NCBI GenBank assembly: GCA_002269645.1
Contig: NIVC01000667.1
Span: 420,703-484,702, forward strand
DNA: 64,000 bases
Source: Macrostomum lignano
Taxonomy: Eukaryota
Direction of reading: 5' to 3'
In this document: piece after piece, positions 16,301-19,300 of the stretch
How the letters are laid out: the number at the start of each line of letters is the position of its first letter
How positions within the stretch are numbered: position 1 is the stretch's first letter
Translations under genes and position numbers: made by a program
Notes under the pieces: generated by a model
What the model was told of the DNA's origin: nothing
Seen by the model: the letters and a program-made list of their open reading frames with translations, nothing else
Databases searched by the model: none

Positions 16301-19300
16301 GAGTGAGGTGGTGGGTGCAGGGTCTAGGAGTGAGGTGGTGGGTGTAGGCGGACTAAGAGTGAGGTAGTGGGTGCAGGGTCTGGAAGTGAGGTGGTGGGTG
16401 CAGGGTCTGGGAGTGAGGTGGTGGGGCAGGGAGACTGGCAGTGAGGACTGGTACAGTGGGACTGAAAGCAGTGTGATGGGTGGCGGTGCAGGAGAGACTG
16501 GGAGCGATTTGGATGAAATGCGCTGTCTGATAAAAACACGAGCTCTGAGAAGATAGTCAGAAAGAGACAGAAAATGTCTTGCCCAGCATATAAAACTAGC
16601 CCAATGCAGTTTCAAAAGGCGGCACTTGGATGCCTTTTTCAATTGTCAGAGAATGTTCTAAGGAATAAAACTGCCAGCTAAAGACGATGATGAAAGGAGA
16701 GTTTGAATGGATTTTCCTAAAAAAAGAGCTTTTCTCCGTGGCAAGCACTCGCTGCTTCAGATTTATCCTTTTTACTTAGCCTCTCTGTGGGACTGTATTG
16801 ATTTGACAAGACAACAAGACTTACCTGTGTTTAAATTCTTTGAATGGATTACGATGGGTTTTAATGCTCAGATTTATTGCTTTGTCTAGCTGCAGTTGCC
16901 AGCAGTGTTCTATGCAGCTTAGGTAAATAACCCTACTGTCAGGGAGTGAAGTGGTTTCAGGGGAGGGCTTGGGTAGTGGAGGGTCGGGGAGTGAGGTTGG
17001 AGTCAGAAGAGGGTTTGGGTATTAAAGGGTCGGGGAGTGAGGTTGGTGTTAGGGGAGGGTTTGGGTATTGGAGGGTCAGGGAGTGAGTTGGGTGTCAGAA
17101 GAGGGTTTGGCTATTGGGGGGTCGGGGAGTGAGATGGGTGTCAGAAGAGGTTTTGGGTATTGGAGGGTCGGGGAGTGAGATGGGTGTCAGAAGAGGTTTT
17201 GGGTATTGGAGGGTCGGGGAGTGAGGTTGGTGTTAGGGGAGGGTTTGGGTATTGGAGGGTCGGGGAGTGAGGTGGGTGTCAGAAGAGGGTTTGGGTATTG
17301 TAGGGTCAGAGAGTGAGTTGGGTGTCAGAAGAGGGTTTGGGTATTGTAGGGTCAGATAGTGAGTTGGGTGTCAGAAGAGGGTTTGGGTATTGTAGGGTCA
17401 GATAGTGAGTTGGGTGTCAGAAGAGGGTTTGGGTATTGTAGGGTCAGATAGTGAGTTGGGTGTCAGAAGAGGGTTTGGGTATTGTAGGGTCAGATAGTGA
17501 GTTGGGTGTCAGAAGAGGGTTTGGGTATTGTAGGGTCAGATAGTGAGTTGGGTGTCAGAAGAGGGTTTGGGTATTGTAGGGTCAGAGAGTGAGATGGGTA
17601 TTAGGAAAAAGGGTTAATACGGCTCGAATATTTGTCAAGTGGAGAAAACTTCGTTCCTAACTGGCGCAGCAATTTCTGAAAGTGCAAAGCACATAAAAAG
17701 CTCCACACAGCAGTGATGAAGCTTCTAAAACATTGGAATTTCGATTTACATCAATTATGCAAATTGCAAGATAGCTAAAATTCTGTCAGATCATTTGCAT
17801 AAATTTGCTCTGCCACTTAAATGCATTCATCAAGCCTACTTGTGGTGCTAAATAAACGGAAGGAACTGTTGCATACAAATGGGTCTCTATAATTTAAAAA
17901 AGCGCATTTTCTAATGCAACGTACCCGTCACTGAAACCAGGCCAGCTAGAATTGCATTGATGATATCGTTGACTTCGAATTTGCCTTTGTTGACCAAAAA
18001 TCTGGGAATAAATTTGAAAGAAAGTGTTATTATGTTGAAGTTAAAAGAATTAGCGCGCTAAGAGCGTATGCCTAACAAATGGCCAACATTTTATTGCGTG
18101 CATTATTGCATATATTAATTTAAAGGCAGAATTATCGGATAAGCGGCTTTGCTTTTACGCTACTGTTAGTAGCTATATCTTGAGAAAATATTAGATTAAG
18201 GTTACATAAGGGTTTCACAGGATTGGGGTTTGGCAAACGCAACTTTTATTTTTCCTGGAACGAGTACCATTTATCATTTACTCTCTTAAAAGTACCATTT
18301 AAGAGACTGTCTGGCAGGAGTACCCGGGGTTTAGTTGGTTGCCACGGCCGTGGGGGCGGTCTTACGACCGGTTTTTGGTCTTTCTAACCCTGGAGAAGGC
18401 ACGGGCTTCCCTGATTGGTTCACTCAACCCCCTCTGGCCCCGGGGAGGTTTTGATTTGAGCTTGGAGTAGGCTTAACGCCCCGAAGGCAGGGGGTAGTAA
18501 CCCCCTTTGCCCAACTGGTGTTGTCTGCTGAGCTTGTTGGCCACAGTCACTCTCACTCTAGCTTAGAAACCTTGTGTACCTTAGTACACTCCTAATCTGG
18601 AACCTTAATTATTACTAGTGGCGTAAGAGCCTGCTCAATGGCTGAGGCGCCGGATCACTTATTTAGTTAGTTAGTTAGTTTTCCTGGAACGAGTACCATT
18701 TATCAAAGTGAATTATTAGAACTTCAGCCTGTTCTTTGTTTAGATGCTATTTTCATATAGAAACGATTACTGATTGATTTTTTTACTTTATTTCAGTAGT
18801 GCTTGGCCAATCTGAAGTTCAAATTTCAGATGGAGCTACGCCCCTGATGGGAGCAACCAACTTTTGTAGTAAAAGAGTTACAAATGTCGATTAATCCACT
18901 ATAATGCATATGCGCATATTATTGCTAAAAAACTGTTTTTTACTGATTTTTTTTACTATCATCGACTGGGTGAACTGATCTACTAATTCGCTGTGCAATC
19001 AACCGAAACAGCCGAGGTGGGTGGCATGAGAGAGAAAGAGAGAATGTCAGTGAGAACTAGAAAGAACCAGCTATACTCACGTGATAAGGAGTCCGCTTAG
19101 TCCTCCTCCCATCGATGCGTTCAGCGTGGTCACGGCCGCTCTAAAAGCATATTTTGGTCGATAAGCAAACAAGTAGCAAGTTCCTTCCTTATGCCTACAA
19201 TAACTCTCTGGCTGTTTCGTTTTATAAGAAAGCATTTCATGGCAGACTGTTTGATGTTTTCTTATTGATTTCCTTTGGTTTGGGATTGCTCACTTACTCT

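What the first reader, a model, noticed from the sequence alone, without database searches (positions are those of the whole stretch)
18139..18705. Two independent retrotransposon insertions land about 77 nt downstream of the same 34-bp motif: candidate distance-targeted non-LTR element
Seen: the motif ATAAGCRGYTTTGCTTTTACGCTACTGTTAGTAG occurs at 18139-18172 (+) and, as its reverse complement, at 43479-43512, 48599-48632 and 53717-53750 (32/34 identical). In each case a related retroelement 3' fragment follows in the same orientation. The tail-side end of its TSD lies 77 nt away (18173-18249; 48522-48598; 53640-53716) or 76 nt in copy 1, which has a homopolymer indel. The intron copy is 77-79 nt given tail/TSD ambiguity. 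The two insertions are independent: TSDs are 25-27 vs 15 bp with different sequences, tails are (TTAG)n vs (CATAGT)n, and lengths are about 400 vs 836 bp. The spacers align only in the first ~23 nt and the TTTA just before the site. Established: in target-primed reverse transcription the tail-side TSD end marks the first-strand nick. Position-specific targeting relative to a landmark is known for Dictyostelium TRE5/TRE3 and yeast Ty3 (tRNA genes), and Xenopus Tx1L inserts into another repeat. Inference: this family measures about 77 bp from a landmark motif via its own DNA-binding domain or a host tether. Caveats: only two independent events, and a short TTGGCAAA similarity between the intron spacer and the element body leaves open that the motif belongs to the element itself.
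Basis: partly seen in the sequence, partly recalled or inferred. Interest (0 to 1): 0.85.

Follow-up and report, generated by a model that had tools for sequence, protein, structure and literature searches.

The report
Retroelement insertions beside a shared motif
Two separate insertions of one family of jumping genes sit exactly 77 bases downstream of the same 34-base motif in an animal genome, which hints at landmark-guided insertion, but two events cannot prove it.

Summary
The 34-bp motif occurs at 18139-18172 (+) and at 43479, 48599 and 53717 (-). Each copy is followed, in the same orientation, by a 5'-truncated retroelement 3' fragment with a microsatellite tail and perfect target-site duplications (TSDs). 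The three minus-strand copies are one event copied by a 5.12-kb tandem duplication (99.6-99.7% identical). That leaves exactly two independent events, with 77-nt spacers in both (76 nt in one duplicate).

The window holds no other copy of the motif or the element, so the association is far beyond chance. Flank homology is confined to about 80 bp around the motif. The nick sites share no more similarity than random sites (p about 0.25).

I tested whether the motif plus spacer is a relic of a related element, a hairpin-ended 111-bp unit, or part of a composite insertion. All tests gave weak or conflicting signals. In locus B only, the TSD start is repeated 5 nt after the motif, so the two spacers may have different histories.

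No further copies could be recovered from any accessible collection, so the decisive genome-wide test was not run. Landmark-associated target choice is the best reading. A strict 77-bp ruler is unproven.

The parts
18139..18172 (+). 34-bp motif, locus A (ATAAGCGGCTTTGCTTTTACGCTACTGTTAGTAG)
   Evidence: It is the core of a shared block of about 80 bp, 18114-18191.
18173..18249 (+). 77-nt spacer, locus A, ending in TTTTAT at the first-strand nick
   Evidence: Only the first 23 nt or so resemble locus B.
18250..18276 (+). Left copy of the 27-bp target-site duplication, locus A
   Evidence: It matches 18679-18705 at 27 of 27 positions.
18277..18299 (+). Extra nucleotides at the 5' junction. They hold part of an 11-nt copy of the TSD (AGTACCATTTA, 18290-18300, running into the element body). 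They also hold the left arm of a snap-back inverted repeat, CTCTTAAA/TTTAAGAG, whose right arm (18297-18304) runs into the element body.
   Evidence: sequence read directly. Homology to the locus B insert starts at 18300.
18300..18662 (+). Retroelement 3' fragment, locus A: a GC-rich structured domain and a conserved 3' domain ending in CACTTAT
18663..18678 (+). Tail, (TTAG)4
18679..18705 (+). Right copy of the 27-bp TSD, locus A
48599..48632 (-). 34-bp motif, locus B, middle copy of the tandem triplication
48522..48598 (-). 77-nt spacer, locus B, ending in GTTTAG at the nick. Positions 6-16 (CCTCGGCGAAA) repeat the start of the TSD.
48507..48521 (-). Left copy of the 15-bp TSD (CCTCGGGAAAAGCAT), locus B
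47665..48506 (-). Retroelement 3' fragment, locus B (842 nt), with an internally duplicated GC-rich domain, the conserved 3' domain, and the tail (CATAGT)3 at 47665-47682
47650..47664 (-). Right copy of the 15-bp TSD, locus B
42537..43512 (-). Duplicate copy 1 of locus B: motif 43479-43512, 76-nt spacer, TSDs 43388-43402 and 42537-42551, insert 42552-43387
52770..53750 (-). Duplicate copy 3 of locus B: motif 53717-53750, 77-nt spacer, TSDs 53625-53639 and 52770-52784, insert 52785-53624

Best explanation
Two subfamilies of one non-LTR-type retroelement family each inserted once, by target-primed reverse transcription, next to a short dispersed repeat whose core is the 34-bp motif. The family has a structured 3' domain and a short tandem-repeat tail.

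The most likely reason for the pairing is target choice tied to that repeat. The element's proteins, or a host factor bound to the motif, bring the endonuclease to the downstream side of the motif. The first strand is then nicked at a nearby TTTA-K step.

Shown: two independent insertions, the same orientation, the same 77-nt offset, and no shared sequence at the nick beyond TTTA.

Inferred: that the motif is the landmark. The 77 nt could be a fixed ruler, or a tether window in which the local nick preference happened to pick the same offset twice.
For: - The motif and the element each occur at only two independent loci in 64 kb, and they are paired both times. By hand, random placement of two inserts within about 110 nt downstream of two motifs in the same orientation has a probability of about 1e-6.
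- The offsets to the first-strand nick are equal, 77 and 77 nt.
- The events are independent. The TSDs are 27/27 and 15/15 with unrelated sequences, the tails are (TTAG)4 and (CATAGT)3, and the inserts are 79-84% identical.
- Flank homology is limited to about -25 to +57 relative to the motif start. The rest of the spacer (33% identity against a null of 27%) and the post-nick DNA are at background.
- The nick-site 28-mers are no more alike than random ones (p about 0.25). A locally sequence-specific target is therefore not evident.
- Target-specific non-LTR elements, including ones aimed at other transposons, are an established kind (PMC4640811). So is integration at a distance from a landmark (PMC5911963).
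Against: - There are only two events, and both motif loci are occupied. No empty target was seen.
- No coding part of the element is in the window, so no DNA-binding or endonuclease domain can be named.
- Known tethered integrators show windows of distances rather than a single-nucleotide offset at about 77 bp (PMC5911963).
- The TSD length varies (27 and 15 bp), unlike classic site-specific elements.
- In locus B the TSD start recurs 5 nt after the motif (p 0.0003-0.007). Locus A shows no equivalent (p 0.75). The equal spacers may therefore be partly accidental.
- The motif has no match to any tRNA or Rfam family. Nothing identifies a factor that would bind it.
Confidence: 0.45

Rival explanations
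1. The motif-bearing segment is itself a relic of a related retroelement, either an inverted or a sense 3'-end fragment. The new copies then landed beside old relatives, as Alu elements land in the tails of older Alus, or as Penelope-like elements form head-to-head pairs. The 77 nt would reflect the anatomy of the old fragment, not a measurement.
For: - Motif positions 12-26 (GCTTTTACGCTACTG) are complementary to the element's invariant 3' box CTAGTGGCGTAAGAGC, with every mismatch a G-T wobble (p about 0.03).
- In locus A the antisense similarity runs colinearly for about 90 nt (p about 0.003 before correction for about 30 tests).
- The motif starts with ATAAG, the reverse complement of the element's terminal CTTAT.
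- In the sense direction, the locus B insert carries a motif-like stretch (TTTGGCTTTTAGTGTACATTAGTAC) 77 nt before its tail.
- Both spacers end in TTTA-K, which resembles one tail unit.
- Penelope-like elements often carry an adjacent inverted 5'-truncated copy (PMC8557442).
Against: - The sense and antisense similarities cannot both be homology, and each is borderline.
- A covariance model of the element's 3' domain finds only the four known copies. It does not find the motif or spacer on either strand at E up to 10.
- nhmmer finds nothing in the flanks.
- The two spacers are not alignable with each other beyond 23 nt. That is odd for the normally best-conserved 3' end.
- The TSD lies between the motif segment and the insert. 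This excludes a single twin-priming or head-to-head event.
- No TSD flanks the motif segment.
- No hammerhead ribozyme was found.
Confidence: 0.2
2. Motif plus spacer form one discrete 111-bp unit with inverted-repeat-like ends, either a MITE-like repeat or a hairpin. The element inserts at the right-hand edge of this unit because it recognises that end or the base of an extruded hairpin. The 77 nt would be the internal length of the unit.
For: - The first 15-17 nt of the motif pair with the last 16 nt or so before the nick in both loci.
- Within about 300-400 nt on either side (the motif's own surroundings excluded), that pre-nick site is the best partner of the motif's 5' half in B. In A it is second best by 0.3 kcal/mol.
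- Empirical p-values are 0.006-0.009 for B and 0.05-0.08 for A.
- The 111-nt segment of locus B folds better than all 200 shuffles (z = -2.6).
Against: - In locus A the fold is ordinary (z = -1.05), and comparable end-pairing occurs at many other offsets.
- Plain alignment does not rank the nick site as either an inverted or a direct copy of the motif.
- The repeat finder reports no such arms.
- No TSD flanks the unit.
- The right halves of the two units are not significantly alike.
- The locus B spacer appears to contain an old duplication of the post-nick sequence. This argues against a unit of conserved length.
Confidence: 0.15
3. The association with the motif is real but loose, for example a regional or sequence-context preference, and the identical offsets are a coincidence.
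For: - With n = 2, an exact match of offsets within a 100-200-nt neighbourhood has a probability of about 1-2% once two ways of measuring are allowed (hand estimate). If a TTTA-K step is required, there are only a few candidate sites per 100 nt: 363 in 128 kb of both strands.
- One reading of the repeated TSD start in locus B puts the original B site 5 nt from the motif, not 77.
Against: - The same orientation, the same side and the same single-nucleotide offset in two subfamilies are together unlikely.
- The A-B homology continues past the upstream repeat copy in B. This argues that no foreign segment was inserted there.
Confidence: 0.1
4. The motif segment and the insert were laid down together in one complex integration event, so the motif is part of the inserted DNA.
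For: - Both motif loci are occupied, and no empty motif copy was seen.
- The 5' junction of locus A is messy, with a partial TSD copy and a snap-back.
- Complex tandem or inverted products are known for Penelope-like elements (PMC8557442).
Against: - Perfect TSDs flank the insert alone and leave the motif outside.
- Standard target-primed reverse transcription leaves the junction between the upstream flank and the TSD untouched on one strand.
- The spacers differ between the loci.
Confidence: 0.05

Closest known systems
Target-specific non-LTR retrotransposons: the Tx1 clade (including Tx1L inside the Tx1D transposon), R1, R2/R4/NeSL, Utopia
   Same: These are retroelements whose copies recur at one position relative to a repeated sequence. 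Their targets include other transposons (PMC4640811; the Tx1L/Tx1D case is from my own knowledge). They integrate by target-primed reverse transcription and are often 5'-truncated.
   Different: In those families the conserved target sequence spans the insertion point, and the TSD or deletion has a constant size. Here the conserved block ends about 54 nt before the nick. The nick sites are not significantly alike, and the TSDs are 27 and 15 bp. The clade cannot be assigned because no reading frame is present.
Landmark-tethered integrators: Dictyostelium TRE5 and TRE3, yeast Ty3
   Same: Integration occurs at a distance from a recognised landmark rather than into a recognised sequence, and on a fixed side with a fixed orientation (PMC5911963).
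   Different: Their landmarks are Pol III genes bound by TFIIIB/TFIIIC. No tRNA or other known RNA gene lies at the motif. Their offsets form windows (TRE5 40-54 bp, TRE3 40-150 bp), and only Ty3 is precise, at 1-4 bp from the start site. Here both offsets are 77 nt, but n = 2.
LINEs of the CR1, L2 or Rex type with a 3' stem-loop and a microsatellite tail
   Same: The 3' domain is conserved, with stems kept and the loop varying between subfamilies. The tail is a short tandem repeat that differs between subfamilies. Copies are 5'-truncated and the TSDs vary in length.
   Different: The resemblance is recalled from general knowledge and was not tested. No reverse transcriptase or endonuclease sequence is available for placing the family.
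Penelope-like elements
   Same: They are 5'-truncated retroelement copies that often have an adjacent inverted partial copy and extra 'tail' sequence (PMC8557442). The motif shows weak antisense similarity to the element's 3' box.
   Different: There is no pseudo-LTR and no hammerhead motif. The TSD separates the motif segment from the insert. The antisense similarity is borderline and is not found by the covariance model.

Membership tests
Non-LTR (LINE-like) retroelement insertion | Target-site duplications flank the insert | tested here: met
   27/27 at locus A and 15/15 at locus B
Non-LTR (LINE-like) retroelement insertion | Copies share a 3' end and have variable 5' truncation | tested here: met
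   The 402-nt and 842-nt inserts are colinear from the 3' end.
Non-LTR (LINE-like) retroelement insertion | A 3' tail (poly-A or a short tandem repeat) abuts the TSD | tested here: met
   (TTAG)4 and (CATAGT)3
Non-LTR (LINE-like) retroelement insertion | The family encodes a reverse transcriptase and an endonuclease | not testable with these tools
   No coding part is in the window. The ORFs inside the insert have no Pfam match and no relatives in the protein collection.
Sequence-specific (site-specific) non-LTR retrotransposon | The same target sequence spans the insertion point in independent copies | tested here: not met
   Post-nick DNA is unrelated between the loci. Nick-site 28-mers score at background (p about 0.25). 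Only TTTA-K is shared.
Sequence-specific (site-specific) non-LTR retrotransposon | Most genomic copies lie at the same target position | tested here: inconclusive
   Two of two independent copies in the window are paired with the motif. No further copies were obtainable.
Landmark-tethered integrator (TRE5, TRE3 or Ty3 type) | The landmark is a Pol III-transcribed gene or another defined protein-bound site | tested here: not met
   ARAGORN finds no tRNA gene. Rfam gives no match at the gathering score, and only chance-level hits at E up to 10.
Landmark-tethered integrator (TRE5, TRE3 or Ty3 type) | Fixed side, fixed orientation and a narrow range of distances from the landmark | tested here: met
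   Both inserts are downstream, in the same orientation, with offsets of 77 and 77 nt. This rests on only two events.
Penelope-like element | Pseudo-LTR or partial tandem copy, hammerhead ribozyme motif, adjacent inverted copy | tested here: not met
   The window holds no tandem partial copy of the element. No hammerhead family hit was found. The inverted similarity of the motif is borderline.
MITE / DNA-transposon relic (for motif plus spacer) | Terminal inverted repeats | tested here: inconclusive
   RNA-type end pairing has p 0.006-0.009 in B and 0.05-0.08 in A. It is not detected by alignment or by the repeat finder.
MITE / DNA-transposon relic (for motif plus spacer) | A target-site duplication flanks the unit | tested here: not met
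   No direct repeat of the post-nick sequence lies upstream of the motif.

The most novel reading that the evidence does not exclude
A metazoan non-LTR retrotransposon family reads a 34-bp DNA landmark that is not a Pol III gene. It places its first-strand nick at a fixed offset of about 77 bp, across DNA of unrelated sequence, with near single-nucleotide precision. Possible mechanisms are a protein or nucleosome-scale ruler, or a fold of the DNA that brings the motif and the nick site together.
Probability: 0.15. Interest if true: 0.8.

Novelty: new variant of a known kind. Interest (0 to 1): 0.5.

Why it matters
Position-specific integration at a distance from a landmark is known mainly from compact microbial genomes, where the landmark is a Pol III gene. 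A family in an animal genome that keys on a different short motif and nicks about 77 bp away would be a new targeting solution. Such a family could also show how endonuclease placement is separated from DNA recognition. The question is cheap to settle, because one pass over the source genome would decide it. If the pairing instead turns out to be nesting among related repeats, the finding is ordinary transposon stratigraphy.

Tried and rejected
1. More copies from outside the window.
- Exact-pattern scans for the motif and for the element's 3' end found nothing in the viral, metagenome and prokaryote genome collections.
- A protein search with an ORF inside the insert found nothing.
- A protein search with a C2-domain exon from the window found only one distant relative (42% identity).
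- A full-text search for the sequences found nothing.

2. Known RNA genes at the motif. There is no tRNA gene. Rfam gives no match at the gathering score and only chance-level hits at E up to 10.

3. Spacer as the 3' end of a related element in the sense direction.
- One motif-like stretch in the locus B insert sits at the right distance.
- Alignment statistics are not significant.
- The covariance model of the 3' domain does not hit the spacer.
- Rejected as unsupported.

4. Motif as an inverted copy of the 3' box. This is suggestive in locus A only (p about 0.003 uncorrected). It conflicts with a sense-strand similarity of the locus B spacer (p about 0.01). Left as a rival explanation.

5. 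A 111-nt hairpin-ended unit. It is supported in B and ordinary in A.

6. A TSD around motif plus spacer. None was found.

7. A shared local target consensus.
- The nick-site similarity is at background.
- The post-hoc pattern TTTA[GT]N0-4CCTC?GG[AG]A matches only the two sites it was built from, so it carries no independent weight.

8. A tandem repeat of about 70 nt around locus B. Tandem Repeats Finder does not find one, and stricter BLAST finds only a 13-mer and a 10-mer.

9. A one-event (twin-priming or head-to-head) origin. This is rejected because the TSD lies between the motif segment and the insert.
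Full report
WHAT IS THERE

The window comes from an animal genome. It carries a rhodopsin-type receptor ORF, a C2-domain exon, and a multi-exon ammonium transporter gene on the minus strand. It is crowded with mini- and microsatellites.

The 34-bp motif occurs four times where none is expected by chance: 18139-18172 (+), and 43479-43512, 48599-48632 and 53717-53750 (-). The three minus-strand copies lie in a 5.12-kb tandem triplication, 39399-54752, that is 99.6-99.7% identical. 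Within the 1.2 kb around the motif they differ by 1-3 substitutions and a few indels. They are one insertion event copied later, so the window holds two independent loci, A and B.

ANATOMY

Locus A:
- Motif 18139-18172.
- Spacer 18173-18249, 77 nt.
- TSD TTTTCCTGGAACGAGTACCATTTATCA at 18250-18276, and again at 18679-18705 (27/27).
- Insert 18277-18678.
- Tail (TTAG)4 at 18663-18678.

The first 23 nt of the A insert are junction filler. They hold part of an 11-nt copy of the TSD and one arm of a short snap-back repeat. This is a usual by-product of 5' joining in target-primed reverse transcription.

Locus B, read on the minus strand:
- Motif 48632..48599.
- Spacer 48598..48522, 77 nt.
- TSD CCTCGGGAAAAGCAT at 48521..48507 and 47664..47650 (15/15).
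- Insert 48506..47665, 842 nt.
- Tail (CATAGT)3.

The duplicate copies of B have spacers of 76 and 77 nt. The site that differs reads C, G or is deleted in the three copies.

The two inserts are colinear from their 3' ends. They share 79% identity over a GC-rich domain and 84% over the last 90 nt. The B insert carries that GC-rich domain twice.

The 3' domain has a conserved hairpin, GTGTAC/GTACAC. It also has a conserved stem, GGCGT..AGCC/GGCT..GCGCC, whose loop differs between the two subfamilies. This is the pattern expected for a 3' end recognised by its own reverse transcriptase.

TSDs, 5' truncation, a shared 3' end and repeat tails make these non-LTR-type retroelement fragments. No reading frame is present, so the clade is unknown.

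Locus A lies in an intron of the ammonium transporter gene, antisense to it.

IS IT MORE THAN CHANCE?

nhmmer and a covariance model of the 3' domain find no other copy of the element in the window. nhmmer finds no other copy of the motif block. So both independent element copies are paired with both independent motif copies, on the same side and in the same orientation.

By a hand estimate, random placement would do this with a probability of about 1e-6. Given the association, identical offsets within a neighbourhood of 100-200 nt have a probability of about 1-2%, allowing for two ways of measuring.

That is where the first strand is nicked in target-primed reverse transcription (established mechanism), so it is the right landmark.

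WHAT THE FLANKS SHARE

Homology between the two reconstructed empty sites is confined to about 80 bp:
- About 25 nt upstream of the motif.
- The motif itself, 32 of 34.
- The next 23 nt, 52% identical (p = 0.0025).

The rest of the spacer is at background (33% against a null of 27%), and so is the DNA after the nick. Around the nick, the two sites share TTTA followed by G or T, and a loose CCT..GG.AA. Their overall similarity is no better than that of random 28-mers (p about 0.25).

A pattern written after the fact to fit both sites occurs nowhere else in the window. This has no independent weight.

ALTERNATIVES TESTED

(a) Is the motif plus spacer the 3' end of a related element, so that the new copy landed at an old tail?
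- The B insert has a motif-like stretch exactly 77 nt before its own tail, and both spacers end in TTTA-K.
- Alignment scores against shuffles are not significant.
- The covariance model of the 3' domain does not hit the flanks on either strand at E up to 10.

(b) Is the motif an inverted relic?
- Motif positions 12-26 are complementary to the element's invariant box CTAGTGGCGTAAGAGC, with only G-T wobbles (p about 0.03).
- In locus A the antisense similarity extends over about 90 nt (p about 0.003 before correction for roughly 30 tests).
- Locus B shows no such extension. Its spacer instead resembles a sense-strand stretch of the B insert (p about 0.01).
- These signals conflict and are each borderline.

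(c) Is motif plus spacer a discrete 111-nt unit with pairing ends?
- The first 15-17 nt of the motif pair with the last 16 nt or so before the nick in both loci.
- That pre-nick site is the best partner within about 300-400 nt on either side in B, and second best by 0.3 kcal/mol in A.
- Empirical p-values are 0.006-0.009 in B and 0.05-0.08 in A.
- In A, similar end pairing is common at other offsets.
- Plain alignment does not see an inverted or direct motif copy at the nick.
- No TSD flanks the unit.

(d) Was it a single complex event? This is excluded, because the perfect TSDs enclose only the insert and leave the motif outside.

AN UNEXPLAINED ASYMMETRY

In locus B the first 10-11 nt of the TSD (CCTCGGGAAA) recur 71-72 nt upstream of the nick, 5 nt after the motif (p 0.0003-0.007). 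A weak colinear similarity continues for about 50 nt (p 0.004-0.06). Locus A has nothing comparable (p 0.75).

There are two readings. In the first, an old local duplication has its junction at the nick. In the second, an earlier short insertion used the same nick. The second reading is disfavoured, because the A-B homology runs through the supposed junction.

Either way, the two 77-nt spacers may not have the same make-up. This weakens the idea that 77 is the length of one conserved unit. It leaves either a true distance effect or partial coincidence.

COMPARISON WITH KNOWN SYSTEMS

Target-specific non-LTR elements are well established, and their targets include other transposons (PMC4640811). 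In those families the conserved target spans the insertion point, which is not the case here.

Landmark-tethered integrators exist, namely TRE5, TRE3 and Ty3. Their landmarks are Pol III genes. Their offsets are windows of 40-54 bp or 40-150 bp, with single-site precision only for Ty3 at the transcription start (PMC5911963). No tRNA or Rfam family lies at the motif.

Penelope-like elements form inverted pairs with extra sequence (PMC8557442). Neither pseudo-LTRs nor hammerhead motifs are present here.

VERDICT

The best reading is target choice tied to the motif-bearing repeat, with a local TTTA-K nick (confidence about 0.45). A strict 77-bp ruler is possible (about 0.15) but is not required by two events.

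The main rivals are nesting beside a relic of a related element (about 0.2) and insertion at the edge of a hairpin-ended unit (about 0.15).

The decisive test is a genome-wide plot of offsets together with a census of empty motif copies. It could not be run, because no collection available here holds the source genome.

Noticed in passing
window 39399-54752: A 5.12-kb segment is present three times in tandem at 99.6-99.7% identity. A 31-bp minisatellite sits near the unit junctions (39213-40193, 44390-45172, 49634-50292). This could be a recent duplication or an assembly effect.
   Followed up: partly
window 15719-27071, minus strand: A multi-exon ammonium transporter gene. Pfam PF00909 matches exons at 25603-25845, 24275-24646, 17914-18057 and 15719-16156. 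Locus A lies in one of its introns, antisense to the gene and roughly 100 nt from the exon at about 18040.
   Followed up: partly
window 29637-32031, minus strand: These ORFs have weak matches to a death domain (PF00531) and to the TNFR16 (p75-type) transmembrane segment. They suggest a p75/NGFR-like receptor gene.
   Followed up: no
window 2310-3479 (+) and 59922-60386 (+): A rhodopsin-family 7TM receptor ORF (PF00001, E = 1e-22) and a C2-domain exon (PF00168, E = 2e-22). The protein collection holds no close relative of the C2 exon.
   Followed up: partly
window 47820-48166, minus strand: The locus B insert carries two tandem copies of a GC-rich domain of about 135-180 nt (GGTTGCCACGGC...CCCCGGGGAGGTTT), closed by CCCGGGG/CCCCGGGG pairing. 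The locus A insert has one copy. It may be a structured 3' UTR module.
   Followed up: no
window 48685-48697, minus strand: An exact 13-nt copy of the motif's 5' part (AAGCAGTTTTGCT) lies 67 nt upstream of the motif in locus B only.
   Followed up: partly
window 48583-48593, minus strand, and the equivalent sites in the other two B copies: The start of the locus B TSD is repeated 5 nt after the motif. The same spot is the only three-state difference (C, G or deletion) among the three near-identical copies.
   Followed up: yes
window 18277-18304: The 5' junction of the locus A insert holds 23 extra nt. They include part of an 11-nt copy of the TSD (18290-18300) and one arm of a snap-back inverted repeat, CTCTTAAA/TTTAAGAG, whose right arm (18297-18304) lies in the element body.
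   Followed up: partly
whole window, e.g. 953-2300, 5000-7700, 9000-12400, 14300-15700, 19400-21900: The density of micro- and minisatellites is very high, with periods of 4-46 bp. They cover a large share of the sequence and create many spurious long ORFs.
   Followed up: no
window 59534-59618 (+): The best non-family hit of the 3'-domain covariance model (16 bits, E = 0.036) falls in a stretch whose ORFs are internally repetitive (59433-59774). It is probably spurious.
   Followed up: no
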